Positions 943 through 63,048 of a stretch of DNA of 64,000 bases are shown here, in pieces; position 1 is the stretch's first letter; each line of letters starts with the position of its first letter. The translations under genes and the position numbers were made by a program. Below the pieces are notes generated by a model. The model did not search any database. It was not told where the DNA came from and saw only the letters and a list, made by a program, of their open reading frames with translations. This DNA is from Octopus sinensis (lineage: Eukaryota): the NCBI RefSeq assembly GCF_006345805.1, contig NC_043019.1, positions 27,775,360 to 27,839,359 on the forward strand, in the 5' to 3' direction.

Positions 943-1013
<71 letters not shown>

Positions 1014-1236
1014 ATTAATATAAACAGCAGGTTGCAATATTTCACCAAAAAGGGGAATTATAATTCTCATTAAATGTGACTAGGGTGTTAAGAAACACCT
1101 ATAGTGCCAATTCAATGACTGAAACAAAGAGAAAAGGTGAAAAAGACACTGCCATGCAATTACTTCAATTCTTAAGTTACCATTTATATACTAAAATAAC
1201 AATTTGAAGTTTGAATCTCTTCAATTCAATACTTAC

Positions 1237-1251
1237 GAGGTTCTGGAGCCG
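1237..1251 (-). CDS. 15-nt micro-exon A (phase 1-1, (P)APEP)
   Basis: ttttcctttttcttatatttttcag|CGGCTCCAGAACCTC|gtaagtatt; paralogous to micro-exon B. Confidence 0.65.
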
Positions 1252-1715
1252 CTGAAAAATATAAGAAAAAGGAAAACTTAATGAAGGTTTAGAATGGCAT
1301 AACAATTAATTTGGTATTTTAATTGAATAACTGATTCTTTACAGAAACACAAACCTTACATTTTCTTATGCAAATGATTTTGTTGAAGTAATATATATAT
1401 ATAACAATACAACAAATTAGACATACTGTGGTAAAAATATGTGTATGTGTGTGTGGGTGTGGGTGTACATACACACACACACACACAAAATGATATGATA
1501 AAATACATACATGCATACATATATAAAATTAATATAAACAGTAGGTTGCAATATTTCACCAAAAAGGATAATTATAATTGTCACTAAATTTGACTAAGGT
1601 GTTAAGAAACAACCACATTGCTAGAAATATCAGCTAAAATGCTCTAATGCTGTAGTTAATGCACATGAATCAAAGCATATACACTAACAGGGACCTGAAG
1701 TGTCCGAAAAATGCT

Positions 1716-1786
1716 GATCAAGAATTCTTAATACTGATGTCAGTTTCGGCAATTTCTGTTGCCTCATCAGTTAAGCTTGCTTGATC
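1716..1786 (-). ncRNA. Canonical type I hammerhead ribozyme
   Basis: Minus strand: GAUCAAG caag CUUAA CUGAUGA GGCAA cagaaa UUGCC GAAA CUG acau CAG UA / UUAAG aauu CUUGAUC. All core nucleotides are present, stems I-III pair fully, the triplet is GUA, and stem I is extended across a 4x4 internal loop. Confidence 0.85.
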
Positions 1787-1815
1787 TCATCTTCTTCAGC
1801 TTGCTTCTCTATTAG

Positions 1816-1821
<6 letters not shown>

Positions 1822-1867
<46 letters not shown>

Positions 1868-2207
1868 TGTGTACAGTGCTCAGGTGCACTACAACTCATC
1901 TAAAGTGTATATATAATCAGGTGTAGTTTCGGCGGATTTCGGAAAGCATGAGGGCCTTAAAGGATGCAGTGTCATGGCAGTCAACAACTGATGCAGGCAG
2001 TTTATTCCATGCTTCAGCAACTCTGAGCGTGAAAAAATGTTTTCGAAAGTCATGGGAGCTGTGTTGTTTTCTGACTTTGTAGGCATATCCACGTGTGTTA
2101 GACACATGGAGATCAAAAAGGTGTTCAGTGTTGTTGTTGGTGAGGTGGTTGATAACTTTGTGGGTGTTTACCAAGTCCGTCGCCAGACGCCGGTATGTTT
2201 CCGCCAC
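1822..2207 (-). mobile_element. CR1-type LINE 3' end
   Basis: NTRGYAYKVRKQHSSHDFRKHFFTLRVAEAWNKLPASVV (CR1 ORF2 C-terminal motif), short 3'UTR, (ATT)n tail. Confidence 0.8.
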
Positions 2208-2475
2208 CCAAATTAATGGATGATTAGCAATTCACTAATGTTTATACATAGAATTAATATAAACAGCAAGTTGCAATATTTCACCAAAAAGGGGAATTAT
2301 AATTCTCACTAAATGTGACTAAGGTGTTAAGAAACACCTATAGTGCCAATTCAATGACTGAAACAAAGAGAAAAGGTGAAAAAGACATTGCCATGCAATT
2401 ACTTCAATTCTTAAGTTACCATTTATATACTAAAATAACAATTTGAAGTTTGAATCTCTTCAATTCAATACTTAC

Positions 2476-7891: not shown

Positions 7892-8649
7892 TACACACAC
7901 ACACAAACACATGCATACATACATGTAGGTGTATGTGTGTATCTTAATGATTGCGTTTGTCCTCCATTACTGCTTGACAACTGGTGTAGGTTTGTTTGCA
8001 TATACCTACTTTAGTGATCTGCTGAAAGAGACAGGAAGAGTAAAGACCAGCCTTAAAAATATAGCTACTGGGGTCAATTTGTTTTACTAAACCCTTCAAC
8101 ATGGTGTCCCAGCATGACTGCAGTCCAATGACTGACACAAATAAAAAGTAAAACACACATACACACACATGCACACATATAGTGAAAGAAATAAAAGAAA
8201 AATGTTAGTTGGCTGCACATTCCAGTAAGATTGTGTAAAAATAGGACACAGTGTACAAATTTTCTTCTTGAAATATAAACAAAAAAACACACACACAAAT
8301 CTCTCTCTCTCCCTCTCTCTCTCTCCCTCTCTCTCTCTCCCTCCCGCTCTCTCTCTCTCTCTCTCCCTCTCTCTCTGTTTCTAAAATGCTACTCCTATCT
8401 TCATGCTTCAGTGAATAATGACAACAACAAATTTGATTGCTAGCAAAGGCAAACCTCTTACAAGTTGGTTACTGTATTATTCTCACCAATCCACCAACTA
8501 CGTCACCACACCGCACAACCATAATCATCATCATTGTCATTGTCATTCATTGTCATCATCATCATCATCATCATCATTACGTGTAATGAGTAATATCATT
8601 AGTCATATGCCAACAAGAGTAACTCTATGCCTACTATCACTTTTGTCTA

Positions 8650-9630
8650 ATGTCAATTTGGTCTAATGACTTTGGTCTAATGAAAATTTGATCTAATGAC
8701 AGTTTAGTTTAATGTCAATGTTTAATGTCAATTAGTTTAATGACACTTTGGTCTAATAACTCTTTAGTTTAATGACACATTAGCGTAATATCATTTTGGT
8801 CTAATGACACTTTGGTCTAATAACGCTTTGGTTTAATGAGACATTAGCGTAATATCATTTTGGTCTAATGACACTTTGGTCTAATAACGCTTTGGTTTAA
8901 TGACACATTAGCGTAATATCATTTTGGTCTAATGACACTTTGGTCTAATAACGCTTTGGTTTAATGACACATTAGCGTAATATCATTTTGGTCTAATGAC
9001 ACTTTGGTCTAATAACGCTTTGGTTTAATGACATATTAGCGTAATATCATTTTGATCTAATGACACTTTGGTCTAATAACTCTTTGGTTTAATGACACAT
9101 TAGCGTAATATCATTTTGGTCTAATGACACTTTGGTCTAATAACGCTTTGGTTTAATGACACATTAGTGTAATATCATTTTGGTCTAATGACAATTTGGT
9201 TTAATGACACTTTGGTCTAACATCACCTTGGTCTAAAGGCAATTTACTCAAAAGTTAATTTGATCTCATGACACTTTGATCTTAGGACAGTTTAATGTAA
9301 TATATATTTGACTTAATGACAGGTTGGTCTAATGTTGATTTGGTCTAACAACTGTTTGGTCTTGCAACTGTTTGGTCTAACATCACTTTAGCCTAAAGAC
9401 AGTTTCATCTAATGTTAATTTGGTCTAATGTCAATTTGGTTTCAAGAGAGTTTAGTTTAATATCTATTTAGTCTACGGAGAGTTAGTCTCCTATCAATTT
9501 GACCTAATGACACTTTGGTCTGAAGAAAGTTTAGTTGAATGGTACTTTGATCTAAGGATAGTTTAGTCTAATATCAATTTGGTCTAATGACATTGGTCTC
9601 TTGACACTGGTCTAATGTAAACTAGGTCTA
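8650..9630. repeat. 16-bp monomer array with a central 64-bp higher-order repeat
   Basis: gacactttggtctaat/aacgctttggtttaat/gacacattagcgtaat/atcattttggtctaat repeated ~7 times (~8745-9195), flanked by degenerate monomers. Confidence 0.9.
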
Positions 9631-10086
9631 ATGGCACATTTTTTGCTACTTGACATAAAAATTACAAAGCAGAATAAATTGAGCAAACATTAGAACACTG
9701 TGCAAATGGATGTAATTTTTATTTTAAATGTTCATAATTTTGAAATTTATTTCATGATGCATGACTTTTCATGTTTTTAAGTTATCTATACACACTGTGT
9801 AGTATATGTAGATTGTAGGGATTTGAAAAAAATATAGGTCATATACTACCTACAAGAACCATGGGTATCAACTGATGCCTGGTGAGTTTTTTATATTTGT
9901 GCACACTTTTATGTATAAATACATTTGAAATCATTTCACTGCTGTTTGAAAATATGTTAGATTTTCATTCACTGTCTCACTTGCTCTCTTACACTCATTT
10001 ACCACTAGTGAGACAGTATGAATGTTGTGCTTTCAAGCTTTGGCCTACATATATATTTTTTTTTGTGCAAAGCTAAAAATCATGGG

Positions 10087-16151: not shown

Positions 16152-16193
16152 ATTATAGACATGTTTCAGTCTATTAGGCCTCATCAGCTTAGT
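16152..16193 (-). ncRNA. Partly degenerate minimal hammerhead
   Basis: CUGAUGA GGCCU aau AGACU GAAA CAUGU C; ACAUGU palindrome and GUC triplet; proximal stem I is mismatched. Confidence 0.45.
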
Positions 16194-16995
16194 TCAGTTT
16201 AAAGAAGCCTAGCATTCTGCTAACAAGGAGTTTTATACATAGAAAAACTATTATGAATCATTAGATTAGCGACAGAGTATTTCTTTATCATTTATATTAT
16301 TCATTTATTGGTTTCCAGCATTGGACTGCAGCTGTAGTGGAGTAATGCTCACAAGACAACTATTTTAGTCTGATGTCTTTTTTTTTAATTATGTATTGAA
16401 AGGTTCAGTATTTTTGTGAGCCCAGGGACACAACTTCATGCAATGGTCTACACAAATATAAGCACACATACGCATATAGATCAGATATATATATATGTGT
16501 GTATGTGTGCATATGTATGTAGATATATTATATATTATATATTATTATATTATATTCTTTTACAAGATGGTAAGCTGGCAGAATTGTTACCACACAGGAC
16601 AAAATGCATAGCATTTTTTTATGATTTGTGTTCAAATGCTGCTGAGGTCAACTTTGCATTTCATCCTTTGGTGGTCAATAAAATAAAGTACCAGTCAAGC
16701 ACTAGGGATCAATGTAATCAGCTTGTCCTCTCCCCTCAAAATACTGGCCTTTTCCCAAAATGAGACAGAATTATATTATATTCCTTTACAAGCTTCAGCT
16801 CAAGGTTGTGGCTGTGCTGGAGCATCACCTGTGCAATTGACACTGCTTCAAAAGTTGCTTTCTGGTGAAGGAGTGAATTTGATGCTGTTGTCCATAACAG
16901 TGCTTCTTGCAATTTCACATCAACCAAGGTTGATCTGAAATGTGTAGAACCCTACCATCAATCAGCACATGTTTTGCTAATCAATAACACTAAAT

Positions 16996-17350
16996 AATAC
17001 ACAATACATACATACATACATACATACATACATACAGACATACATACATACGTACATACATACATACATACATACAGACATACATACATACGTACATACA
17101 TACATACATACATACATACATACATACATACAGACATACATACATACGTACATACATACATACATACATACATACATACTACATACATACATACATACAT
17201 ACATGCATACATACACACACACACATACATACATACATACATACTTACATGCATGCAAACATGCATGCATGCATACATACACACATACATGCATGCATGC
17301 ATACATACATACATACATACATACATACATACATACATGCATACATACAT
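16996..17350. repeat. (ATAC)n microsatellite block
   Basis: Direct reading; one of dozens of (TA)n/(CA)n/(ATAC)n tracts, e.g. 13900-14510, 42720-43300, 47900-48530. Confidence 0.95.
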
Positions 17351-17351
17351 A

Positions 17352-17495
17352 GTGTACAGTTGTGGAAATCAGCTGCCCCGTGGATATTAACATAAAGCTG
17401 AAGATTAGTGAAAAAGAGAATACCTACACTGAATTATTGAGAAATCTGCAGTTACTCAATCCATATTACAAGTTCAGATTTGTACCTGTAATTTT
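17352..17495 (+). mobile_element. Short fragment of the same RLE-type LINE
   Basis: EISCPVDINIKLKISEKENTYTELLRNLQLLNPYYKFRFVPVI, homologous to 62480-62620. Confidence 0.7.
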
Positions 17496-17699
17496 TGAGT
17501 GTGTATGTATTAGTCATCTATGCATACTTGTTCACCTATCTGTGTTTGCATACAAGCACACACATACGTACACATATATATGAATGTGTATAAAGGCATA
17601 TATGCTGTATTGCTTTATATGGAGAAAATGTGTGTTATGTATAAGTGTTGAATGTGTGTGTGCTTGTGTGTGGTTGTTGTGCGTGTATGTGTGTATATA

Positions 17700-17755
<56 letters not shown>

Positions 17756-17757
17756 GT

Positions 17758-17792
<35 letters not shown>

Positions 17793-17849
17793 ATATAATA
17801 TATATATATATATTACATTATATATTTGTTTTGCAAGATCCTTGATGTG

Positions 17850-18993
17850 AAATCATGTGTTGAAACAGATATTATTGTATTTAGGAATAGTCATGTTGCC
17901 AGTTTAGCCAATAAAACACATGTACTATATATTTGGTGTTAATTTGCTTCAGCTTTATTTTTTACATTAATCGTATTTCGGCCAGAGTTCGTTCGTCACA
18001 CTTCTGTGACCTCATCAGTGGTCCTTTGCTTTCTTCTTTCTTATTTGTGTGTCTTTCCTTACTAACAATCAGCCATTTTGTATTTTGTATTCCTATTCTA
18101 TTTGCACATGCATATACCCCTATGCGTGTCTATGTTTTGTAAGTGCGTGTGTGTGGAGGGTGCCTGTATTATCTGTATCCCTTGTTTATAAATGTTCATT
18201 TAATGTTATTTATTTTGTTCATTTGTTTATATCTACTAATTATTTTTTATTCTTTCTTGTTTTGTATTTAATTTAATTTAATTTTGTTTTGTTAACATAT
18301 ATAGTTATTTAATTCCATTTGTTTATCTGTGTATTGTATTATTCATATTGTTATCAGTTTATGGGGATTTCATTCTGTCATATGTTGTGGTGAGTTGGGG
18401 GGTGGTGGTGCTAGTTTCCATTCCAGTTTCCTATTCAGGCTAAGTTTATCTTCTATTATGTGTGTAGCTTCTGTAATTTGTCTAAGCATTGCGTCTGTTC
18501 TATGTATGGACAAAATTTTAAATTCTATGTTGTTGAATGAGCCCCCATGTTGCTGCTTGGCATGCTGGTATAGAACTGATGAGTTCTTCTCTTCCTTAAG
18601 TTCCCTCCAATGCTCATTTACCCACTCTCCTATGCTCTGTGCTGTTTCCCCTACGTACATCGCTGTCTTGTTACTGCACCATCCCTCTGTACATTTTATA
18701 CTATAGAATACATTTCTGGCTTTACAGTTTGTTTGTGGGCTAAATCTACATACAGTACAGTTCCTATCAGTATAGGGAGTTCTACTAAAAGGGTAGGTTC
18801 TACCGATTAGGGATTTGATAGGGTTGCCTGGCCTTTCAACAACCTTAATTCTTAGCTTAAGTTTGTCTAGGGCCCTTCTAAAGCAGTACGACAGTTCACC
18901 TCTAGGGATGGTGTTGACAAACATGACACTCTGGTATTTTTGGCTATCATACCATGAGTTGGCCTTCCCTATTTTCTTCTTAGGAACATGCAT
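17850..18993 (-). mobile_element. Penelope-like element 3' part (GIY-YIG endonuclease + pLTR-like tail)
   Basis: ORF 18370-18993: NCKARNVFYSIKC..YVGETAQSIGEWVNEH..DAMLRQITEA..LNRKLEW. The tail contains a CUGAUGA..GAAA core at 18018-17976. Confidence 0.85.
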
Positions 18994-33332: not shown

Positions 33333-34390
33333 TCATCATCATCATCGTTTAACGTCCGTTTTCCGCGCTAGCACAGGTTGGACGGTTCGACCGGGGTCTG
33401 GGAAGCCAGGGGCTGCACCAGGCTCCAGTCTGATCTGGCAGAATTTCTACAGCTGGATGCCCTTCCTAATGCCAACCACTCCGCGAGTGTAGTGGGTGCT
33501 TTTTACGTGCCACCTGCACAGGTGCCAGGGGGGGCCTGGCATCAGCCACAATCGGTTGGAGCTTTTAACGTGCCACCGGCACGGAAGCCAGTCGGGTCGG
33601 CGCTGGCATCGGCCACATTCGGATGGTGCTTTTTATGTGCCACCGACACACGTTCGGATGGTGCTTTTTATGTTCCACCGGCACGGAAGCCAGTCGGGGC
33701 GCGCTGGCATCGGCCACGTTCAGATGGTGCTTTTTATGTGTCACTGGCACAGGAGCCAGTCGAGGCGGCGCTGGCATCGGCCACATTCGGATGGTGCTTT
33801 TTATGTGCCACCGACACACGTTCGGATGGTGCTTTTTATGTTCCACCGGCACGGAAGCCAGTCGGGGCGCGCTGGCATCGGCCACGTTCGGATGGTGCTT
33901 TTTATGTGCCACCGGCACGGAAGCCAGTCGGGGCGGCGCTGGCATCGGCCACGTTCGAATGGTGCTTTTTATGTGCCACCGGCACAGAAGCCAGTCGGGG
34001 CGCGCTGGCATCGGCCACGTTCGGATGGTGCTTTTTATGTGCCACTGGCACAGGAGCCAGTCGGGGCGGCGCTGGCATCGGCCACGTTCAGATGGTGCTT
34101 TATATGTGCCACTGGCACAGGAGCCAGTCGGGGCGGTGCTGGCATCGGCCACGTTCGGATGGTGCTTTTTATGTGCCACCGGTACAGAAGCCAGTCGGGG
34201 CGGAGCTGGCTGGAATCGGCCACGTTCGGATGGTGCTTTTTATATAGATATATATATTTAATATATGTATATAGAGAGAGATCAGACTGGAGCCTGGTGC
34301 AGCCCCTTGGCTTCCCAGACCCCAGTCAAATCGCCCAACCTGTGCTATCATGGAAAACGGACGTTAAACGATGATGATGATGACGATGAT
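33333..34390. mobile_element. (ATC)n-tailed retroposon pair in inverted orientation enclosing a GC-rich minisatellite
   Basis: Arms 33333-33445 and 34279-34390 are reverse complements (~90% by eye); same family at ~12380-12530, 23170-23510, 55905-56030. Confidence 0.8.
33540..34232. repeat. 66-67-bp GC/CpG-rich minisatellite (~10 units)
   Basis: Unit cacgttcggatggtgctttttatgtgccaccggcacggaagccagtcggggcggcgctggcatcggc; unit starts at 33883, 33950, 34016. Confidence 0.95.
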
Positions 34391-39485: not shown

Positions 39486-40189
39486 TATGTATGTATGTAT
39501 GTATGTATGCATGTGTGTGCATGTGTATACACAAATTTGTATGTGTGTATATATATATATATATATATTTCTTGCCTACAGCTGTTTCCTCACTCAATTA
39601 ATTCAAATACGGAAATATAATTCAAATTTCTATAATTGAAACCATTCAATTGGTTTCACTGAATGCTGGTAAAAACTGGAGAACTTAGATGCTTAAGGGA
39701 CTTTGGTTCCTTAACTAAATAAAATAATATATATATTCCTTTATTTGTTTCAGTCATTTTGACTGTGGCCATGCTGGAGCACCACCTTTATTCAAGCAAA
39801 TAAACCCCAGTACTTATTCTTTGTAAGCCTAAAACTTATTCTATCAGTCTCTTTTGCCGAATTCCTAAGTTATGGGGACATAAACACACCAACATTGGTT
39901 GTGAAATGATGGCAGAGGCACAAACACAGACACACAAATACACACACACACACATACACACACACACAAACACACACACACAACACACACACACACACAC
40001 ACACGCACATACATCAGACTTCTTTCAGTTTTCGTTTCCTAAATCCACTCATAAGGCTTTGGTCAACCAAGGCTATAGTAGAAGACACTTACCCATAGTG
40101 CAATGCAGTGGGACTGAACCTGGAACTATGTGGATGGTAAGCAAGCTACTTACCATGCAGCCACTCCTGCACCTATAAGCCACTCCTGC

Positions 40190-41600
40190 GCTATTGTGAT
40201 GGGAACAGAAGCAGCACCTGTCCTTGCGAACCTAATAATGGGTTTCTTTGAATCTACCCTATATGAACTTTTGCTCCAAAAATTTGGAACCCCATTCCAC
40301 CAGTATATAAGAGAAAACTGGAAAAGGCACCTAGATGATTGTTTTATCATCTGGAATGAAACCTATGATAAACTCTTGGATTTCAAATCCACACTGAACA
40401 ATATAAACCCCAACATCCAATTTACATGGAATATAGCAAGGAACAGCTCCCATTTCTGGATATTTTGATTTTAAAAAAGTCCAACAACCAAATTGCAACA
40501 AACATTTACTACAAACCAACAGACTCAAAACAGTATCTCCTTTTCAGTTCATGCCATCCTAAACACATCAAAATAAATATCCCATTCAATCTAACAAAAC
40601 AGATCTGTACAACTGTATCTGACACAACCAAGCCTACAAGAACTCAAAATAGCACTCCTTGAACGCCAATACCCACCTCCACTTATAGAACATGGAATTA
40701 AATGTACCAAGAAATTGGACACAAACACACTAAGGACAACTAAACAAAACACCACACCTCACCTTAAGTCACTCCCATACATATCAACCCACAACTCCAG
40801 AAACAATGAAGCATACAACACAGTTATACAAAATCTCCCTCTGCTCACTCAAGACCCGAAAATGAACAGCATCCTAAATACACACAAGGTACTAAAATGC
40901 AAAAGACAAGATAAATCACTCAAAAGACTCCTAACAAATGCCAAACTATACTCAATACAAATGATACCAACAGTTAATAAATGCAGACAATCTAATTGTG
41001 GTACATGCCCATACCTAACTGAAGGCTCGGAATTCATATTCCAGCAAGGACAAAAATTCTCAATTATAACCAACTTCACATGTGCTTCCCAGAACCTTAT
41101 CTATGTTCTAAACTGCTCAGGTTGTGGTCACAATTATGTGGGCCAAACGAGCCTTACTTTGAGATGCAGAGTCATGCTGCATAAAGAACAGATTCGTTTC
41201 CCTCAATACAGGCAGATAGCACTGAGCAGACATATCGACATATGCGCAAGTAATAAAATGCCGAATTTTCATATCTTCCCTTAATAACAATGTAAAGATT
41301 CAATCTCAGTACAAGAACACCTAAACAAGGAAAACCTGTTCATACAAAAGTACAGACCACACCTCAATATACAAATTTGACCATTTTAAAAATTATACTA
41401 AGGAGCCAGTTGTCCCTCTTGCCACCTGTTACTTCCTTTGGTTCACTCTCTATACTCATTCTTCTTATTCTTCAAACATCCAAAATGATGAAACCCCTGT
41501 ATCACGAGAACTGATTACTGTACAATGTCCCTTGAAAAGCTAATTTAAATAGCAAAAACCGGTTGGATTTCACGACATCCATATAATATGTATATATTTA
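40190..41600 (+). mobile_element. Penelope-like element (Neptune-like), 5'-truncated and frameshifted RT + GIY-YIG
   Basis: MGTEAAPVLANLIMG, WKRHLDDCFIIW, LPFLDILI, YYKPTDSKQYLLFSSCHP, C..C..C linker, TCASQNLIYVLNCSGCGHNYVGQT; decayed hammerhead at 41528-41567. Confidence 0.9.
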
Positions 41601-49959: not shown

Positions 49960-51205
49960 TCAGAGGTGTTTATCGCCTCTGTAATCACTTACCGCCTGAC
50001 AGTCGTGCTTTGCCTCGATTCGTGGATGAACAAGCTGGAACACATGCTCTTTCGCTTTTTCTGGAAGAGCAGCAGACCTCTTGTAAGGCGCTCTATCTGT
50101 TGCCAAAAGCCCCTGAAGGGTGGGTTAGGGATGCCGTGGCTAAAAATGCGCAGACATGCGCTCAGGCTTAGGCACCTCTGGCTTTACCTGGACGGTGAGC
50201 AGGTGTGGACTCCGTTCGTCAAGCTGTTATTTCCACAGTTCACATCGTTTAACGAACTGAACCCATGGATCAAGTGTAGACAGAGGTTGGGCGTGTGGCA
50301 TATAGAGTGCCATCAGGCACTCGTGCTTCTCTCCCAGTCGGGCAACGCCGGTGGCGGGAGTACTACCTCGTTCTTCTATAGAGGGTTAGTAGAGTTTAAG
50401 TGTGACGACGTCCTGGGAGAAACTCTAGGCTTCAACGAAGATCAACTGGCCAGCCTGTTCCAAAGAACAGTCGAGCCGGGGCCTATGGATAATTACCAAA
50501 AGTCCCTGGCCTGGCAATGTTACAGAGGAGCTTTACCGGTTCGAGATAAGCTCTTTAGACATGGGTGTGCACCTTCGCCGGTTTGTGCAAGATGCGAGCG
50601 GGACAGTGAAACTGTCCTGCATGCGATTGTGCAATGCCCCAAGGTGACTGAGCTCTGGGCTTATGTCGAACACATGCTGTCGCATTCGAGAAGAGTACAA
50701 CTATCGAGCGAATCTGTAATTAAGATCGTTCCACCGACCTCCTTGAATAGGGAGGAGCGAGCCTGTTTTCTCTCGGTAGTTGCTGTGGCGAAAGAAGTAG
50801 TATGGAAGACGAGAGTAAAAGGAATTGCAACAGGCATGTTTATCTCCAGTCTCGAGCTAATCGACTTTTTCGTTTTCCACATGAAACGGAAAATAAGGCT
50901 GGAGAAGAAATGCTTGTCGCAAAATGTGTTTCGTAAAAGATGGAAGTCTATAGCAAGTATGTTGCGAGTGAAAGAACCTGTTTAATCGAGAATGTGAAAA
51001 AGGAGAAAGCAAAGTCTTCAGTGTGAGTATGTGGTTTGTGGGGTCGACCGCGTCCTCCCCTTCATTTTTTGTTATTCACTCATTCTCATTTAATTGTTTA
51101 TTTATTCATACGTTTCATTTCATTCGGTACCCTGATCCCAATGTTTGTTTTGACTGTCCTCGTATCGTTCCCTCTTTTTCTCAACTTTATGGTGAATAAA
51201 AAAAT
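49960..51205 (+). mobile_element. L1/Tx1-clade LINE, 5'-truncated ORF2 C-terminus (zf-RVT) + 3'UTR
   Basis: 339-aa open frame: FFWKSSRPLVRRSICCQKPLKGGLGMP..W..YRGALPVRDKL..C..C...ETVLHAIVQC..V..LW; AATAAA/A-rich end followed by (TC)n. Confidence 0.9.
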
Positions 51206-51920: not shown

Positions 51921-52365
51921 TGAAACTCCGACGTCTGGCAGCTGACTTGGCAGACACCCATAAAATTATTAACCATCTTACAAGCAATAACTCTGAGCAT
52001 CTTTTCAAACTCCACCCGTCTAACACCCATGGACATGTTTACAAAGTCAGAAAACAGCACAGCTCCCATGACTTTAGGAAACATTTTTTCACATGAGAGT
52101 TGCTGAAGCATGGAACAAACTGCCGGCATCAGTTGTTAGTTGTCGGAGCACTGCATCCTTCAAAACTTCCATGCTTTCTGAGATTCGCCAACGCTACACC
52201 TGATTTTCTCCACTCCATGTATCTGACTCATACATTTCTCCCCAGCATGTATCTGACTCATACATTGTTCACTTTCCAGACATTTGTACATTACTGCATA
52301 CACTTTATACGTACTTTCTGACAAGTTGTGGTGCACCTGAGCACTGTATACAATAATTTCATTGT
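51921..52365 (+). mobile_element. CR1-type LINE 3' end, same family as 1822-2207
   Basis: Homologous coding tail (cagcacagctcccatgacttt..gaagcatggaacaaactgccggcatcagttg) and terminal gtgcacctgagcactgta. Confidence 0.8.
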
Positions 52366-52368
52366 TAT

Positions 52369-52425
<57 letters not shown>

Positions 52426-55047: not shown

Positions 55048-55052
55048 TAATG

Positions 55053-55151
<99 letters not shown>

Positions 55152-55180
55152 ATAACAACAACAACAACAACAACAACAAC
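55001..55180. repeat. Compound (AAT)n(AGT)n(AAC)n microsatellite
   Basis: Direct reading; immediately upstream of the hammerhead-bearing element. Confidence 0.95.
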
Positions 55181-55224
55181 GAAAATACTTTAGGAATGAG
55201 AACCCGGGTTCGAAATTTCCCGAA

Positions 55225-55270
55225 GACACCTGATGAAGGCTGGAGGGTATACCAGCCGAAACGTTGTGTT
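55225..55270 (+). ncRNA. Minimal Penelope-type hammerhead with palindromic stem III
   Basis: GACAC CUGAUGA a GGCUGG agggUaUa CCAGCC GAAA CG UU / GUGUU; AACGUU palindrome. Confidence 0.65.
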
Positions 55271-55826
55271 AACAACAAACAAGATGAGGATAATTATCCG
55301 TCAAATGGAAAATAACGTAAATAACGTAAATAATGTAAATAATGTACATAATTCCCCATCTTTTAAATATAGAACTGCACATATTTTTTTTTTTTTTATT
55401 TTTACTTGTTTCGGTCATTTGACTACGGTCATGCTGGAGCACTGCCTTGAAGGGTTTTAGCCAAACAAATCAACCCCAGGACTTTTTCTTTAAGCCTAGT
55501 ATTTATTTTTTCGGTCTCTTTTGCTGAACCGCTCAGTTACGGGGACGTAAGCATACCAACACGGGTTGTCAAGCGATGATGGCGGGGACAAACACAGGCA
55601 CAAAAACACACATATAGATACACACACACGCACACACACACACACACACACATACACACACATATATGAGGGGCTTTTTTCAGTTTCCGTCTACCATATC
55701 TACTCACAAGGTTTTGGTCGGCCTTAGGCTATAGCAGAACGACTTGCCCAAGGTGCCACGCAGTGGGACTGAACCAGAAGCCATGTAGTTGGGAAGCAAG
55801 CCTCATACCACACAGCCACACCGGCA

Positions 55827-55893
<67 letters not shown>

Positions 55894-56768
55894 GATCATG
55901 ATCATCATCATCGTTTAACGTCCGTTTTCCATGCTGGCATGGGTCGGACGGTTTGACTGAGGTCTGGAGAGCCAGCGGCTGCACCAGGCTCCAATCTGAT
56001 CTGGCAATGTTTCTACAGCTGGATGTATTTCTCCTGAAGTTGCCTTTCCAGAAATATTGCATCAGTGGTGCTTCTGCCTGGCACAAAACCAAACTGCATT
56101 TCATCTAGGCCACTGGAATTTGAAGTTCCTGCTTGTAAATCAGTACAGATTATCAGAGGTTCTGTCAAATTTTGTTTCGCATTCCTCTTTAATTGACAGC
56201 AGAAGCACTATACTGTCAAAACCAATCTAACATGAAAATATAAAATATAAACGAAAACCAAAAATAAACCTCTCAAGAACAATTGTACACAGTAATATTT
56301 CATTTATAATTTTTAAACCGGATAGAATTATGAGAAAAACCACAAGAGGTTATTTGGGGCACAAGGTTATAAGAGGTTACTTGAGTGGTAAATATGATGG
56401 GACGTGTACTTAAAACGATGGTTTTAGCCACTTCGTGACAAAAAAAAACTATACCTTAAGCAATGTAACTCACTTATACATCATTTATAAGCACAGGACC
56501 ATAAAATTTAATCCGATTAGATAAAGTAAACAAGGAGATAGTTAGGTGACAGAAGCAGCTATATTTTTTTTAAAAAGTAGCATTAAATTTAAATCTAATA
56601 ATATTAAAGTTTCCATTGCCTTTTCTTTATTTTTTCTCCACAAGTTAATGAATTGTAAACAAAATCTACGATACTCGCACATTTACACCCTAGTACATGT
56701 GTTATGCAGTGTAGATGAGTATGCACACGTATGTACATACACATACATCCACACAGACATCCACACTC

Positions 56769-56809
<41 letters not shown>

Positions 56810-56845
56810 TACACACATTTATATGCATATATATGTACATATATA

Positions 56846-57124
56846 CAGTGGTGAACTGGCCAGGTTGCCAGCTTGCCCGATGGCAAGTGGGCCTCTGCGT
56901 CGTTAGAATCCATATATGAAGGCCCATGTTAGTATCTAAGTTTGAGATTTTTTATTCAGTCCTGGAAGAATGTCTTAATTATTTCAGTCTGGCTGTGTTT
57001 GTAGACAGTTGAAAATAATACGTTTAACAATTAAAAAAAAAATCAATTATAGCATTGTAGTTGTGGGTGGGCCCCCTTAGTCTCCTGGCAACCAATATTT
57101 TTTTTTTTACCCAGTCTGCCACTG
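56846..57124. mobile_element. hAT-type MITE
   Basis: TIR CAGTGGTGAACTGG / CCAGTCTGCCACTG; exact 8-bp TSD CATATATA. Confidence 0.75.
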
Positions 57125-57137
57125 CATATATATATAT

Positions 57138-57536
57138 ACTCTTTTACTCTTTTACTTGTTTCAGTCATTTGACTGCGGCCATGCTGGAGCACTGCCTTTT
57201 TTAGTCGAGCAAATCGACCCCGGGACTTATTCTTTGTAAGCCCAGTACTTATTCTATCGGTCTCTTTTGCCGAACCGCTAAGTGACGGCGACGTAAACAC
57301 ACCAGCATCGGTTGTCAAGCAATGCTAGGGGGACAAACACAGACACACAAACACACACACACATATATATATATATACATATATACGACGGGCTTCTTCC
57401 AGTTTCCGTCTACCAAATCCACTCACAAGGCTTTGGTCGGCCCGAGGCTATAGTAGAAGACACTTGCCCAAGGTGCCATGCAGTGGGACTGAACCCGGAA
57501 CCATGTGGTTGGTAAGCAAGCTACTTACCACACAGC
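57138..57536 (-). mobile_element. SINE family I, young full-length copy
   Basis: High similarity to 46261-46638. Confidence 0.9.
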
Positions 57537-57975
57537 GTATGCATCAATGTATATGGGTTTGACGAGTTGCCTATACAGCTAATCGCTTTGCAGGTGCAAA
57601 ACCAATGGTCACTCTGAACGGCCATAACGAACAACCTTCTCTCTCAAGCACATACACATACACACTCACATATTCTCGTACAAACATTCAGGCACAAACT
57701 CAAAAAAAAACACATCGAGCACACAAATACACACGCGAACACTTGCGTACACGCACACACTTTTGTGTGTTTATGCGAGTGGGATTGTGTGTGTACACAT
57801 ACATATAAACACACTCACATAAACGCACACATACATACACAAACCCGCGCATACACATTCACAAGCACTCACGTTGGCGGATACTTTACTTTTCATCAAC
57901 CTCATGGGGATGAAAGTATAGTTGGCTTCGACGAGATTTGAACTCGGAACTTAATACTGTAACTCACGTTTTTTT

Positions 57976-58238
57976 CATTAGAGGCTATTCTTGAAACGAT
58001 GAGACTCACATCTCAGAAGATTAAACAAACTGAAGCGATGTTATGGACATCAGAGATTGTAAGAAAATAGGTTTCGTTCTCTTCGCTTCTTTCGGGTTCA
58101 CGCCATATTGTCGTCTGCTCTGTCCATTTGGTCACGTGACTCGGTGTCGTCTGCTCTGTCCATTTGGTCACGTGACTCGGTGTCGTCTGCTGCCAATAGA
58201 CAACAAAATCTGTCCCTTTCTGTCCCTCTTTCCCCCTT

Positions 58239-58278
<40 letters not shown>

Positions 58279-58830
58279 GCTCCCTACACTGTTCCTTTGT
58301 CTCTTTCCTCCCACTCTTCTTTTTCTCCGTTTTAAAAACACACACATACACCCGTACAAACACACGCAAACATGCAAACGCATAAACACACAGACAAACA
58401 CACGCGAACAAACATAAACATACATAAACGCAAGCACATGCACATACACAAACAAACTCACACACACTCGCACAAACATACGTGCACACAGTCACAAAGA
58501 CACAGATAATACATACGCAGACACTCAAACACAGACACACAAATTCAGAAGCACTCACATACACAGTGCGCGCATGTATATTAACTTTTACAAGTATATA
58601 TTTAAAGATTAAATTTAAATAAATATGTATAACGAAGTCTCACACTTTCCATTAGAGGCCATTCTTGAAACGATGAGACTCACATCTCAGAAGATTAAAC
58701 AAACTGAAGCGATGTTATGGACATCAGAGATTGTAAGAAAACAAGCTTCGTTCTCTTCGCTTCTGTCGAGTTCACGCCATATTGTCGTCTGCTCTTTCCA
58801 TTTGGTCACGTGACTCGGTGTCGTCTGCTT
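57976..58830 (-). promoter_or_regulatory. Duplicated promoter-like module (CCAAT, GTCACGTGAC E-boxes, YY1-like motif, downstream GTGAGT donor)
   Basis: E-boxes at 58131-58140, 58167-58176 and 58805-58814; CGCCATATTG at 58101 and 58775; CCAAT at 58193; donors at 58009 and 58683. Function is inferred only. Confidence 0.4.
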
Positions 58831-58870
58831 CGAATCGGCAGTAAAATCTATCTATCTATCTATCTATCTA

Positions 58871-58909
<39 letters not shown>

Positions 58910-59810
58910 GCCTGCCTGCCTGCCTGTCTGTCTGTCTTACCCCTCTCTCTCTCTTCCCTTCCCCTCTCTATTCCTCCCTCTCTCTCTTCCCTCTCTTTCT
59001 TTTTCCTTTCTCTCCCCCTCTCTCTCTCTCTCCATCTCCCCATACACTTTCTTTGTCCCTTTCCTTCCACGCTTAGCGTCTTTTTTTCCGCTTTAAATCA
59101 TATACATATACACGTACAAATATGCACACGCATTCACACACCTACAAACACACTCAGAAAGCATAAATATACACATACGCAAACACATGCACACTCATAC
59201 TCTCAAACAAACATACACACATACACACATACCTGCGCGCGCGTACACATTCTCACGTGCCCCCCCCCACACACACACACACATATACATACAAATATGT
59301 GCACAAATATACACATGCACTTATACACACACATATATGTATAATGCAAAGACAACCTGTAGATTGTGATAGTAAAATAGAAATAAAATTTTAAAATTAA
59401 TTCTTTTTTTGTGCGGCCCAGTATCAAATGATCCAAGGCCTGTTACTTGGTCCATGGCAACGATGGTTAGAGGCCCCTGCCTTACAAAATAATGTATACA
59501 TATATATTTCGGTGGTGTATTTTCCAGGCAGTGATTCAATCTGAAACCTTGTGTTGAAACTAAAATAATTGCAGCGTATAAGGCATATATTAGTCACTCA
59601 ACACACACGAACATTGTTAACTTCAGTTAAACATTTATTGCTTGGTGTCAAAAATTTCGTCGCTCCAAGTGCAACCTAATCACCGACGTAATTCTATACA
59701 TATGTATACGATATGCGTGTGTGTGTGTATGTATATGTAGTAAGTTCACACGTATGTATTATAGTGAGTTGGAAAACTTCGATTAACTGGGGTAAAATCT
59801 CACTCTACAG

Positions 59811-60135
59811 TTGTGGTTCTCAGTTGGGGTCCATGTGATCCTTGGTGGTCCATATAAGGTTTTGAGGGGTTCACACAAGCAAAATAGTAAATTGAGTCCA
59901 TAGTATTTCATGGGTCCATGAAAATAATTTTGTTTTAGATGTATTTATTGCAAAACACAGCTTGTTTTCTTTCCCTGACGTTTTACACAAGAGATTGTAT
60001 GATAGACAAAATAGGAATTTTGAAAAACATATCAATAAAGCTAGTTTTTAAACATCGAATGGCTATGGGGAGTCCACCAGAACAAAATAGTAATAAAAGG
60101 GGTCCATAGATAAAAAAAATTATTAGGAAACACTG
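59811..60135. mobile_element. hAT (Charlie-like) MITE
   Basis: Degenerate CAGTGGTTCTCA-type ends; 8-bp flanks CTCTACAG / CTCTAGAG. Confidence 0.6.
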
Positions 60136-60269
60136 CTCTAGAGTGTTCAAAATTTAAACAACGAAAGAGGGGTTAACTGTGAAAAGACCAGCCAGTCAGC
60201 CGGATGTTTTAGGCAATCTACACAATGAGGATAAGAAAAGTTGAGGTCTTTAAAGGCATTTGGATAAAG

Positions 60270-60516
60270 CAGTAGTTTTCAACCAGGCACTTGGGGGTCC
60301 ACAAAGATCTTGGTGTCAAAATTTACATGCAATAACTTGGTTACAATTCCAAAGTACTCAAAATATTTCAACATTTTTTAAATACAATTCTTAGCGGTAT
60401 TTAACCATGAAAATGTAATGCGAGATTTTTAAACATTGAATGGCTATGGGGGTTCCAGTAGAGTAAAGAAGGAATGAAAGGAGTCCGTGGGCACAAAAAA
60501 CGGTTGAGAACCACAG
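60270..60516. mobile_element. hAT (Charlie-like) MITE, related to 59811-60135
   Basis: CAGTAGTTTTCAACC / GGTTGAGAACCACAG; flanks GGATAAAG / GGTTAAAG. Confidence 0.6.
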
Positions 60517-60696
60517 GGTTAAAGTCACATTTAAACCTCGCTGGACCTTCTCCCTTAAGTAAATAATACTGAGTTGGTAAGACTAAGAATCTTTAATACC
60601 CACACACGTGCACAAGTGTGTGTGTGTGTGTGCGTGCGTGTGTGTGTGTAGGAAAAAGTTGGCAGTATATATGTAAAGACGAAAAGTTAATAAATA

Positions 60697-61251
60697 TTGG
60701 GTTGTCCGGAAAGTTCGCACCGATTTATAGTAGCTTACCTTTCGACTTATTTTAGAACATGGTTGAGTCCATAAAATACGATTTGACTACATGTCCACAG
60801 GTTACGCTATCTTTTCGTGGAAGAAGGTTTATGTTCCTATAACCTGTGTTAATTCTGTAACTCTTTAAAATGGAAGATAAGAAAGTTCATTTTTGGCACT
60901 TGATTCTTTGGGAACCAGACAAAATTGCTGCAGCTCGGCTGGGATGTGTTACCCCACTCTCCATATTCACCAGATATTGCTCCTTCGGATTTCCACTTAT
61001 TCAGGTCTCTGCAGAATGGGCTTAATGGTAAAAATTTCAATTCCTTGGATGACGTAAAAATATACCTTGATGAATTCTTTGCCATGAAACCACCTCATTC
61101 TGGGAAGAGAGCATTTTCAAGTTACAGGAAAGATGGAGACGCATTGTGCAACAAAATGGTTCATATTTGGTTGATTAAAAATGTAATGGCAAGTATTTAT
61201 TGACCTTTTTCTTTCCTTTAAAAATCGGCACGAACTTTCCGGACAACCCAA
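60697..61251 (+). mobile_element. Internally deleted mariner element
   Basis: TIRs TTGGGTTGTCCGGAAAGTTCG / CGAACTTTCCGGACAACCCAA, TA TSD, LGWDVLPHSPYSPDIAPSDFHLFRSLQN motif. Confidence 0.9.
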
Positions 61252-62297
61252 TATTTACAAAAAAAAAAGTGTTGAGTAATCCTTTAGTTTAATACTAAAT
61301 TGTTTTTTTTTATGTACAACTTGACGTAAAAGCAAAGATTACTATATTTTTTATATTTGTTACAGTTACAAGATTGCAGCCATGCTGGGGCACCGCCTTG
61401 AAAATCTTTAGTCCAACGAATCAACAACAGAGCTTTTTTATGTTTTTTTTAAAGCCTGGTACTTATTCTATCAGGAAAGGATCGAGATTTTTCCATTCAC
61501 AAAATATGCATTTTTTTAAAAGGAAGTAAAAATCTGAAAATCGGCAATAATAATGTCACCTTCTAGTTTCATTGCTTTGAAGGTATGATGTTGTGGAGAG
61601 AAAAAAATTGGAGAAAAAAATTACAGAAGTTTAAAAATCGTAAAAACTGGGTATTTTTAACCAATAGCGAGACAGAAATTTTCTGCGTTTAGCGGAGCGG
61701 TTTCAACTTTAAGATTGTACCCTGTAAAATTTATAGTTTAGCGTCTGGCCTGTTCATTGTAGGTTTCTAAATAAACTGAAATACGTATCATATTAATTCC
61801 AAATAACATCAGATTCTTTAATTTACGAGATAAAGTAATTAGTTGATCGTAATCAAAATTCGCATCGATACACCAAAATTGAAAGCAATCTGAGCAAAAT
61901 TATTGGGAGGAGGGTCTCATTTTGCGAATGAGAAAGACCAGATCCTCAGGGGAACTTATGGCGGACCGCTGGGTTACGGGGCTGTAAACAAAGAAACACT
62001 AGCATCAAGCAGTGGTGGGGGCGAACTCAGACACACAAACATACATTTATATTTACATAGACGACGGGTTTCTTTTCAGTTTCCGTCTACCAAATCCACT
62101 CACAAGGGTTTGGTCAGCCCGAGGTTATAGTAGAAAACACTTGCCCCAGGTGCAATGGCACTGAACCCGGAACCATGTGGTTGGGAAGCAAACTTCTTAC
62201 CAAAGTCACGCCGTATAGCCGTATGTGTGTGTGTGTGAGTGTGTGTGCATGTGTGTGTGTGAGTGTGTGTGTATGTGTGTGTGTGTGTGTACATGCA

Positions 62298-62331
<34 letters not shown>

Positions 62332-62339
62332 AAAAAAAG

Positions 62340-62790
62340 AAATACGAACCCACAGTATGGTAGAAGCCATAGCCACTCATAATAAAAAGGAGTACTGGTG
62401 GAATGTCCCAGTGAAAACCCCAAAGAACTGTAAACACAATAGACCAGACATAATAATTTGGGATTGAGAAGAGAAACTGTGTACAGTTGCAGAAATCAGC
62501 TGCCCAGCTGATGTTAACATAAAGCTGAAGATCAACGAAAAAGAAAATACCTATGCTGAACTACTGAGAAATCTGCAGTTACTCTATCCAGATTACAAGT
62601 TCAGGTTTATGCCTGTAATTATTGGGACACTGGGATATGTAACACACTGCCTAAACACCAATCTTCAGAAATTAGGCTTCTCAAAACCAGAAAGGAGAAA
62701 GCTGACTCGAAAACTACAGATCCAAGCCGTCACTGGAATTGTAAAAATCTGTAAAACTTTCCAGGAGTTTAGCAGTTTAAGTATATATGT
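62340..62790 (+). mobile_element. RLE-type (R4/NeSL-like) LINE 3' fragment
   Basis: WWNVPVKTPKNCKHNRPDIIIWD..EISCPADVNIKLKINEKENTYAELL..PVIIGTLG (restriction-like endonuclease domain). Confidence 0.75.
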
Positions 62791-63048
62791 GCATCTCTAG
62801 ACATGCAACTATATGCATGAGAATACATACATAAAACAAAGCATACGAATCTGCACATATACATATAAACAAACAAATATATCCTGTTGATGTTGTTGGA
62901 ATGAAGGAACCTTGGAAACCGGCTCTTTCTCTACTGGCAAGAAATTTTGAAATAAAACTGAATAATGACATGCACACATACTCACATGCGCGCGCACACA
63001 CACACAGCAGAAATGTAATGACTGTGATTATGAATATTAATACGACTG

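What the first reader, a model, noticed from the sequence alone, without database searches (positions are those of the whole stretch)
1716..1786. Intact full-length hammerhead ribozyme on the sense strand between the two micro-exons
Seen: a complete CUGAUGA/GAAA/GUA core with stems I, II and III fully paired. Stem I continues through a 4x4 internal loop into a further 7 bp. Established: a bulged stem I plus loop II is the architecture of natural type I hammerheads active at low Mg2+. Inference: the host pre-mRNA could self-cleave between 1732 and 1731, inside the ~1.2-kb intron separating micro-exons B and A. That would couple ribozyme kinetics to micro-exon inclusion or truncate transcripts just after the TM segment.
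Basis: partly seen in the sequence, partly recalled or inferred. Interest (0 to 1): 0.82.

Follow-up and report, generated by a model that had tools for sequence, protein, structure and literature searches.

The report
Solitary hammerhead ribozyme motif in octopus DNA
A complete, textbook-shaped type I hammerhead self-cleaving RNA motif really is encoded at 1716-1786 on the minus strand of this octopus sequence, but it looks like one more of the retroelement-type hammerheads common in invertebrate genomes, and its proposed role in splicing a host gene is not supported.

Summary
The minus strand 1786-1716 has CUGAUGA, GAAA and GUA, three fully Watson-Crick helices (I 5 bp, II 5 bp, III 4 bp), a 4x4 internal loop and a further 7 bp on helix I. 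Cleavage would fall at 1732|1731. Chance expectation is about 1e-4 per window and about 1-5 per octopus-sized genome.

The window is an Octopus genome, about 88-90% identical to O. bimaculoides. It also holds a Penelope-type minimal hammerhead (55225-55270, +) and a decayed one beside a GIY-YIG-like ORF. Hammerhead-bearing retroelements are therefore present in this genome.

Caveats:
- No Rfam hammerhead model exceeds 12.2 bits.
- The predicted minimum-energy fold is not the hammerhead. CUGAUG pairs with CAUCAG, 4.2 kcal/mol better.
- No second copy or orthologue could be retrieved.

The host-gene story is weak. Only a superseded O. bimaculoides model uses exons downstream of the TM exon. In this species one of those exons has a stop and no donor, and another has lost its acceptor. 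The two "micro-exons" lie in 93%-identical local duplicates.

Verdict: a genuine-looking, solitary, probably retroelement-derived type I hammerhead. It is a new member of a known kind, of modest interest.

The parts
1716..1786 (-). Complete type I hammerhead motif (71 nt) including the extended helix I
   Evidence: Sequence read; descriptor hit; chance rates
1780..1786 (-). Helix I, distal part, 5' strand GAUCAAG; pairs with 1716-1722
   Evidence: inverted repeat I2
1776..1779 (-). Internal loop of helix I, 5' side (CAAG); candidate partner of loop II
   Evidence: same 4x4 layout as the Schistosoma yardstick
1771..1775 (-). Helix I, proximal part, 5' strand CUUAA (positions 2.5-2.1)
1764..1770 (-). 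Catalytic core box C3 U4 G5 A6 U7 G8 A9
1748..1763 (-). Helix II (GGCAA/UUGCC, with the G10.1-C11.1 pair) closed by the 6-nt loop II CAGAAA
1744..1747 (-). Core box G12 A13 A14 plus A15.1
1733..1743 (-). Helix III (with A1744: ACUG/CAGU) and loop III ACAU; U16.1 = 1733
   Evidence: the hairpin alone is -2.8 kcal/mol
1731..1732 (-). Predicted scissile bond between A17 (1732) and U1.1 (1731)
   Evidence: Follows from the hammerhead numbering applied; cleavage itself not tested
1727..1731 (-). Helix I, proximal part, 3' strand UUAAG
1723..1726 (-). Internal loop of helix I, 3' side (AAUU)
1716..1722 (-). Helix I, distal part, 3' strand CUUGAUC
1733..1739 (-). CAUCAGU: 3' arm of the competing helix that pairs with ACUGAUG (1771-1765) and buries core positions C3-G8
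   Evidence: MFE folds; inverted repeat I6
1626..1820 (-). Single-copy 195-nt segment that carries the hammerhead. It is bounded by the (ATT)n tail of a LINE fragment and by a truncated repeat copy, and it folds as a rod.
   Evidence: No other copy in the window or L001; no homology to the neighbouring repeat units; fold z = -3.2; boundary

Best explanation
This is a genuine hammerhead-lineage sequence: a solitary, canonical (Schistosoma-like) type I hammerhead ribozyme motif. Most likely it is the remnant of a hammerhead-bearing retroelement (a non-LTR retrozyme or Penelope-related element) that landed in a repeat-rich, non-coding stretch of an Octopus genome.

If the minus strand is transcribed, the RNA can form helices I, II and III around the CUGAUGA/GAAA core. 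By the established hammerhead mechanism, G12 then activates the 2'-OH of A17 (1732) for in-line attack on the 1732|1731 phosphate. This leaves a 2',3'-cyclic phosphate and a 5'-OH. A contact between loop II (CAGAAA) and the 4x4 internal loop of helix I is expected to stabilise the active fold.

A competing 7-bp helix (ACUGAUG with CAUCAGU) probably makes cleavage slow or confined to a co-transcriptional time window. Its position on the sense strand downstream of the LOC106875178 orthologue is most likely incidental.

Shown: the anatomy, the statistics, the presence of other hammerheads and Penelope-like remnants in the same window, and the repeat context. Inferred: catalysis, the tertiary contact, the retroelement origin, and the lack of a host function.
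For: - The anatomy is canonical at every defining position, with 21/21 Watson-Crick helix pairs.
- Chance expectation is 1.2e-4 per window. There were 0 hits of this quality in 51 Mb of random sequence.
Such peripheral elements give high activity at low Mg2+ (review PMC6155905).
- The window holds a second, independent hammerhead at 55225-55270(+). [quoted passage not shown]
- A decayed min-HHR-like motif lies 350 nt 3' of a GIY-YIG-like ORF.
- CUGAUGA...GAAA sites are enriched: 6 matches against 0.97 expected.
- Canonical and minimal type I hammerheads coexist by the thousands in invertebrates, molluscs included, as retrozymes and PLEs (PMC7229834).
- The motif sits in a mosaic of retroposon pieces next to a microsatellite. 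PLE-type elements favour microsatellite targets (PMC8557442).
Against: - No Rfam hammerhead model reaches its threshold. The best clan hit is Hammerhead_3 at 12.2 bits (E about 4), and RAGATH-1-hammerhead scores 13.3 bits.
- The nearest-neighbour model puts the hammerhead fold 4.2 kcal/mol above the MFE, at about 0.06% of the ensemble, with C3-G8 paired at p>0.95.
- No second copy exists in the window, in 80 kb of O. bimaculoides, or in metagenome and viral collections, and no ORF-level trace was found. Family membership by homology is therefore unproven.
- It is not in a tandem repeat as retrozymes are, and not next to a Penelope ORF.
- Helix III (4 bp with a non-palindromic loop) is longer than in typical metazoan canonical hammerheads.
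Confidence: 0.6

Rival explanations
1. The motif is intact but effectively dead. The sequence descends from a real hammerhead, but in this copy the core is locked in the alternative 7-bp helix (ACUGAUG/CAUCAGU), so the RNA is a stable hairpin that does not cleave at a meaningful rate.
For: The MFE and centroid folds of the 71-, 79- and 86-nt RNAs all show the alternative helix. The hammerhead fold is -18.3 against -22.5 kcal/mol. Even the nascent 55-nt prefix prefers the alternative helix, -11.5 against -8.6 kcal/mol. The Schistosoma yardstick has the hammerhead fold as its MFE.
Against: Nearest-neighbour energies ignore the core's non-canonical pairs and the loop-loop contact. Many natural hammerheads (viroids, retrozyme circles) coexist with inactive alternative folds and cleave during transcription. 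Zero mismatches in 21 pairs is unexpected for a decaying relic.
Confidence: 0.24
2. One reading: a domesticated intronic hammerhead on the sense strand of the host pre-mRNA. Its cleavage competes with splicing and so controls micro-exon inclusion or truncates the transcript, in the manner proposed for the amniote intronic hammerheads in RECK and CTCL.
For: The motif has the same orientation as the LOC106875178 orthologue. It lies between two 15-nt segments with strong splice signals. The superseded O. bimaculoides model ends ...LELKL|RPQNL|RP, which fits spliced use of such micro-exons. A stable helix III would allow action as a monomer. Pairing is perfect.
Against: Current RefSeq isoforms end the CDS just after the TM exon. 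In this species exon 2 has a stop and no donor, the exon 3 acceptor is CAA, and an insertion abuts it. Exon 3 shows no clear coding constraint. The micro-exons lie in young local duplicates. No conservation or expression data could be obtained. In Xenopus, retrozyme hammerheads are depleted from introns.
Confidence: 0.06
3. A chance look-alike: an AT-rich imperfect hairpin that happens to contain the hammerhead boxes and has no ribozyme ancestry.
For: A 2.7-Gb genome of this composition is expected to hold about 5 chance matches at >=5/5/4 bp, and about 0.7 with a distal helix. The region is an imperfect inverted repeat whose MFE fold is a simple hairpin. There is no Rfam support and no relatives were found.
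Against: The expectation for this one window is 1.2e-4, and those chance figures allow G-U pairs whereas all 21 observed pairs are Watson-Crick. The same window contains two other hammerhead-type motifs, one of them perfect. True hammerheads therefore greatly outnumber chance ones in this genome.
Confidence: 0.1

Closest known systems
Schistosoma mansoni Sm-alpha type I hammerhead (the 'full-length' hammerhead of Martick & Scott 2006)
   Same: Type I topology and an identical core. Helix I is interrupted by a 4x4 internal loop and followed by a distal helix. Helix II is closed by a 6-nt A-rich loop (CAGAAA here, CAAAUA there).
   Different: Helix I/II lengths are 5/5 bp here against 6/4 bp. 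Helix III is 4 bp with an ACAU loop. The loop nucleotides that make the known contacts are not the same. Here the hammerhead fold is not the MFE. Sm-alpha is a high-copy SINE-like repeat, whereas this is a single copy in 125 kb of octopus DNA.
Non-LTR retrozyme hammerheads of invertebrates (Acropora, Mytilus; PMC7229834)
   Same: A canonical type I hammerhead in AT-rich non-coding DNA of an invertebrate that also carries Penelope-like elements. The carrier segment is predicted to be highly self-paired. In Mytilus the archetypal loop nucleotides are likewise absent.
   Different: Retrozymes are tandem repeats of 150-450 bp. Here there is no tandem repeat and no second copy.
Penelope-like element min-HHRs (PMC4209133)
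   Same: Type I core and a retroelement context. True examples of this kind lie in the same window, at 55225-55270(+) and, decayed, at 18026-17976(-).
   Different: The candidate has no extra nucleotide between A9 and 10.1. Its helix II is 5 bp rather than 6-8 bp. It has a real 4-bp helix III instead of a tiny palindromic one, and a long bulged helix I. It is not adjacent to a PLE ORF.
Amniote intronic hammerheads HH9/HH10 (RECK, CTCL; reviewed in PMC6155905)
   Same: A type I hammerhead resembling the retroelement hammerheads, placed in sense orientation within a gene's transcribed or intronic region.
   Different: Those are ultraconserved across birds and mammals. Here conservation is untested, the intron itself is doubtful, and the Rfam HH9/HH10 models do not match.

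Membership tests
Hammerhead ribozyme, type I | Core box C3-U4-G5-A6-N7-G8-A9 | tested here: met
   CUGAUGA at 1770-1764(-)
Hammerhead ribozyme, type I | G12-A13-A14, the A15.1-U16.1 pair, and H17 (not G) 5' of the scissile bond | tested here: met
   GAA at 1747-1745, the A1744-U1733 pair, A1732
Hammerhead ribozyme, type I | Three helices around the core with a G10.1-C11.1 pair; helix I open, helices II and III closed | tested here: met
   Helix I 5+7 bp, helix II 5 bp, helix III 4 bp, all Watson-Crick
Hammerhead ribozyme, type I | Peripheral elements for the helix I-helix II tertiary contact | tested here: inconclusive
   A 4x4 internal loop and a 6-nt loop II are present in the Schistosoma-like geometry. 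The contact nucleotides cannot be verified from sequence.
Hammerhead ribozyme, type I | Score at or above the gathering threshold of an Rfam hammerhead covariance model (clan CL00010) | tested here: not met
   No hit at gathering. The best clan hit is 12.2 bits against 48.5. The clear min-HHR at 55.2 kb gets no hammerhead hit either, so these models are insensitive to such retroelement variants.
Hammerhead ribozyme, type I | The hammerhead secondary structure is the preferred or a well-populated fold | tested here: not met
   -18.3 against -22.5 kcal/mol; about 0.06% of the ensemble in the nearest-neighbour model
Hammerhead ribozyme, type I | Site-specific self-cleavage giving 2',3'-cyclic phosphate and 5'-OH ends | not testable with these tools
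   Needs in vitro transcription or end-mapping
Hammerhead ribozyme, type I | Covariation of helices among homologues | not testable with these tools
   No homologue retrieved
Non-LTR retrozyme | Tandem repeats of about 150-450 bp, each with a type I hammerhead | tested here: not met
   TRF finds only (ATA)n nearby. BLAST finds a single copy in the window.
Non-LTR retrozyme | Monomer RNA is highly self-paired and has low GC | tested here: inconclusive
   The 195-nt segment folds as a rod with z = -3.2, but part of the pairing is microsatellite-like AT sequence.
Penelope-like element min-HHR | [quoted passage not shown] | tested here: not met
   None of the four holds for 1716-1786. The first three hold for 55225-55270(+); no PLE ORF was found next to that site.
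Domesticated intronic hammerhead (HH9/HH10-like) | Lies in a bona fide intron, in sense orientation | tested here: inconclusive
   The orientation matches the gene. The intron depends on a superseded gene model whose other exons are damaged in this species.
Domesticated intronic hammerhead (HH9/HH10-like) | Conserved at the orthologous site across species | not testable with these tools
   The O. bimaculoides locus L001 ends at the equivalent of window position 11634.

The most novel reading that the evidence does not exclude
A monomer-competent canonical hammerhead has been retained in sense orientation inside a spliced 3' region of an octopus-specific single-pass membrane-protein gene. It would act as a kinetic switch. 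During transcription there is a short window before the competing ACUGAUG/CAUCAGU helix forms, and in that window the RNA either cleaves (ending the transcript before micro-exon A) or is locked and spliced. That would be the first invertebrate counterpart of the amniote intronic hammerheads.
Probability: 0.05. Interest if true: 0.7.

Novelty: new member of a known kind. Interest (0 to 1): 0.3.

Why it matters
Type I hammerheads are already known to be widespread in metazoan repetitive DNA, so one more copy does not change the picture. Two things are mildly useful.

First, no paper in the held library describes cephalopod hammerheads. This window shows that both architectures, canonical and Penelope-type minimal, occur in an Octopus genome.

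Second, this copy has an unusually stable helix III and a built-in competing helix. That makes it a convenient natural case for testing how alternative folds gate hammerhead cleavage. Only if it proved conserved and transcribed within the host gene would it bear on the open question of what intronic hammerheads do.

Tried and rejected
1. Rfam at gathering threshold on the whole window, and in E-value mode on 701 nt and 101 nt. No significant hammerhead hit; the mir-297/466 hits are (GT)n artefacts.
2. Is the ribozyme the 3' end of the adjacent LINE? Rejected. A second copy of the LINE at 51928-52373(+) ends in the same (ATT)-like tail and is followed by unrelated sequence.
3. Is the 195-nt carrier a diverged part of the neighbouring duplicated units A and B? 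Rejected. The local alignment score is no better than for shuffles.
4. Are the 93-bp pieces that flank the insert a target-site duplication? Rejected. A' is the outgroup to A and B.
5. Orthologous locus. P0001 and P0002 are not on record. Isoform X1 (P0003) gave L001, which is collinear only down to window position 11634. The micro-exon is not in L001, and no downstream gene is known from which to fetch the rest.
6. Exact look-ups of ORFs overlapping or flanking the motif: nothing found.
7. Homology search with peptides translated across the motif, to catch ORF calls on other copies: nothing found.
8. Homology search with the GIY-YIG-like ORF, to fetch octopus Penelope loci: nothing found.
9. 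Pattern scan CTGATGAGNNNNCAGAAANNNNCGAAAC. Metagenomes gave 2 hits, both without a helix II and therefore chance. Viral contigs gave 0.
10. Representative search with the LINE ORF, to harvest more cephalopod DNA. It led only to a 1.7-kb JGI contig and was abandoned.
11. The other CUGAUGA...GAAA sites at 16164 and 25096 are not hammerheads.

Full report
**What is there.** On the minus strand, 1786-1716 reads GAUCAAG-CAAG-CUUAA-CUGAUGA-GGCAA-CAGAAA-UUGCC-GAA-A-CUG-ACAU-CAG-U-A|UUAAG-AAUU-CUUGAUC.
- Every defining hammerhead position is canonical: C3-A9, the G10.1-C11.1 pair, G12-A14, the A15.1-U16.1 pair and H17 = A.
- Helix I is open (5 bp, a 4x4 internal loop, then 7 bp). Helix II (5 bp, 6-nt loop) and helix III (4 bp, 4-nt loop) are closed. 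This is a type I motif.
- A descriptor search of my own finds this site and no other in the window or in 80 kb of O. bimaculoides.

**Is it more than chance?**
- In 51 Mb of first-order Markov sequence with the window's composition there was one hit to a lax descriptor (>=4/3/3 bp) and none at the observed quality.
- Importance sampling gives 1.2e-4 expected per window at >=5/5/4 bp with G-U allowed. That is about 5 per 2.7-Gb genome on both strands, and about 0.7 if a distal helix is also demanded. All 21 observed pairs are Watson-Crick, which is better than those criteria require.
- For a single window, chance is negligible. In a whole-genome scan a handful of look-alikes would exist, so context matters.

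**Context: organism and gene.**
- An exon at 30827-30528(-) is 86-87% identical to the uncharacterized protein LOC106875178 of Octopus bimaculoides.
- The O. bimaculoides locus L001 is collinear with the window's minus strand from 63998 down to 11634, at about 85-93% identity. The window therefore comes from another Octopus species, and the gene is on the minus strand, the same strand as the ribozyme.
- The three current RefSeq isoforms end their CDS by reading through the donor of the TM exon (...YFSSQ|GKLLFFHNMV...STF).
- Only the superseded XP_014778702.1 splices on to two further exons (window 19942-, and 16912-16790) and ends RPQNLRP. The exon or exons encoding RPQNLRP lie beyond L001.
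They have good splice signals and would encode RPQLL and RLQNL. They fit that old model, and the ribozyme lies in the 1224-nt interval between them.
- In this species, however, exon 2 has an in-frame TAA and no GT donor. The exon 3 acceptor is CAA instead of CAG, and a 2.07-kb insertion (window 18991-16924) abuts it.
- pN/pS is 0.39 for the TM exon but about 0.73 for exon 3.
- The micro-exons occupy equivalent positions in two 93%-identical local duplicates, 1011-1481 and 2250-2930.
- Whether the interval is transcribed could not be tested.

**Immediate neighbourhood, read along the minus strand.**
- Unit B comes first, and carries a SINE insertion.
- Next is a 5'-truncated LINE 3' end (about 2215-1868), whose ORF remnant has the typical C-terminal tail. 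It ends in (ATT)16 at 1867-1821.
- Then comes the 195-nt single-copy segment with the hammerhead (1820-1626).
- After it lies an older truncated copy of the unit's 3' end (about 1625-1519), and finally unit A.
- A second copy of the LINE at 51928-52373(+) shows that the hammerhead is not part of the LINE.
- The carrier segment has no other copy in the window or L001 and no similarity to units A and B.
- It is predicted to fold as a rod with the hammerhead near its tip (z = -3.2), but part of that pairing is AT-microsatellite-like.

**Other hammerheads in the window.** CUGAUGA-N(6-34)-GAAA occurs 6 times against 0.97 expected.
- 55225-55270(+) reads GACAC-CUGAUGA-A-GGCUGG-AGGGUAUA-CCAGCC-GAA-ACGU-U|GUGUU. 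It has the extra nucleotide after A9, a 6-bp helix II with G10.1-C11.1, a minimal palindromic helix III and a 5-bp helix I. These are the published hallmarks of Penelope-like-element min-HHRs (PMC4209133). A descriptor for this form finds it, with 0 hits in 38 Mb of random sequence.
- A decayed relative (CUGAUGA-G-GUCACA-GAAG-UGUGAC-GAAC...) lies 350 nt 3' of a GIY-YIG-like ORF at 18993-18370(-), inside the insertion that O. bimaculoides lacks. A second GIY-YIG-like ORF is at 40715-41284(+).
- This genome therefore carries hammerhead-bearing retroelements. That makes a real, retroelement-derived origin far more likely than chance for the candidate.
- The literature reports thousands of canonical and minimal type I hammerheads coexisting in invertebrates, molluscs included, as non-LTR retrozymes and PLEs (PMC7229834; PMC8557442).

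**What speaks against a working ribozyme.**
- No Rfam hammerhead model comes near its threshold. Hammerhead_3 scores 12.2 bits and RAGATH-1-hammerhead scores 13.3 bits, although the latter alignment does trace all three helices. The unmistakable min-HHR at 55.2 kb gets no hammerhead hit at all, so these models are insensitive to such retroelement variants. A canonical type I motif could still have been expected to score higher.
- More serious is the predicted MFE fold, which pairs ACUGAUG (A2.1 plus C3-G8) with CAUCAGU (loop III plus the 3' strand of helix III). The hammerhead fold is 4.2 kcal/mol less stable (-18.3 against -22.5), at about 0.06% of the ensemble. Even the nascent 55-nt transcript prefers the competitor.
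- Nearest-neighbour energies ignore the core and the loop-loop contact. Natural hammerheads often coexist with inactive folds. This point therefore lowers, but does not remove, the expectation of activity.

**Classification.**
- The motif works like, and by anatomy is, a canonical type I hammerhead of the Schistosoma/retrozyme kind.
- It fails the defining tandem-repeat feature of retrozymes.
- It fails the structural hallmarks of PLE min-HHRs.
- It cannot be tested for the conservation that defines the amniote intronic hammerheads.
- Its 4-bp helix III with a non-palindromic loop suggests a monomer-acting form. That differs from the dimer-dependent design typical of metazoan canonical hammerheads.

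**Verdict.**
- Observation: confirmed.
- Interpretation: partly supported. The motif, its strand and its position between splice-like micro-exons hold up. The functional coupling to a host intron is not supported.
- Best explanation (about 0.6): a solitary, probably retroelement-derived type I hammerhead whose catalytic competence is plausible but unproven.
- Main rival (about 0.24): the same sequence locked in the competing helix.
- Other rivals: chance about 0.1; a domesticated regulator about 0.06.
- Novelty: a new member of a known kind.
- Interest: modest.

Noticed in passing
window 55225-55270 (+): A complete Penelope-type minimal hammerhead: GACAC-CUGAUGA-A-GGCUGG-AGGGUAUA-CCAGCC-GAA-ACGU-U|GUGUU. 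It lies just 3' of a tRNA-T-loop-like GGTTCGAAAT and of (AAT)n/(TAG)n microsatellites, and is antisense to the host gene. There were 0 such motifs in 38 Mb of random sequence, and Rfam gives no hammerhead hit.
   Followed up: partly
window 16924-18991 (-), with ORF 18370-18993 and motif 17976-18026: A 2.07-kb insertion that is absent from O. bimaculoides (L001 75196/75197 are contiguous). It carries a GIY-YIG-like ORF remnant (weak: no Pfam hit, pairwise E = 0.003 to the ORF at 40715-41284). About 350 nt downstream is a decayed min-HHR-like motif with C at position 15.1. The insertion ends about 16 nt upstream of the acceptor of the old gene model's exon 3.
   Followed up: partly
window 19942-19890 (-) and 16912-16790 (-): These are the exons of the superseded O. 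bimaculoides model XP_014778702.1. In this species exon 2 reads GSSHMIVNVDNCSFLLL* and has no GT donor. The exon 3 acceptor is CAA instead of CAG. Exon 3 has pN/pS of about 0.73, against 0.39 for the TM exon.
   Followed up: yes
window 1011-1481, 1519-1625, 2244-2930: A local duplication (units A and B, 93% identical, with a SINE inserted in B at about 2640-2840) plus an older truncated copy of the unit's 3' end. Each full unit contains one of the 15-nt splice-flanked 'micro-exons'.
   Followed up: partly
window 1868-2215 (-) and 51928-52373 (+): Two 5'-truncated copies (80% identical) of a LINE 3' end. The ORF remnant has the C-terminal tail ...RKHFFTLRVAEAWNKLP..., and the element ends in an (ATT)n-like tail.
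   Followed up: partly
window 1626-1820 (-): The 195-nt single-copy segment around the hammerhead folds into an extended rod (-53.1 kcal/mol, z = -3.2, 0 of 200 shuffles as stable). UUUCGG (1709-1704) is complementary to CCGAAA (1749-1744). This resembles self-paired retrozyme RNAs, but it may owe much to AT-rich ends.
   Followed up: partly
window 33495-34243: A GC-rich tandem array with a period of 67 bp (also 101, 133 and 168 bp), open in several frames on both strands. It looks like a satellite or SINE-derived array.
   Followed up: no
window 8638-9637: A tandem array of a 16-bp unit (CACTTTGGTCTAATGA) organised in a 64-bp higher-order repeat, about 63 copies.
   Followed up: no
window 40130-41284 (+) and 49966-50985 (+): Further retroelement remnants: a GIY-YIG-like ORF with an RT-like piece upstream, and a 339-aa LINE ORF2 C-terminal piece with a zf-RVT domain (Pfam E = 5e-9). 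The closest representative of the LINE piece (61% identity) sits on a 1.7-kb contig of JGI metagenome 3300045673.
   Followed up: partly
window 55050-63430 versus L001 57407-57411: About 8.4 kb of the window has no counterpart at the collinear position in O. bimaculoides. That assembly has gaps nearby (N runs at 56480-56827 and 57811-59814), so it is unclear whether this is an insertion or an assembly gap.
   Followed up: no
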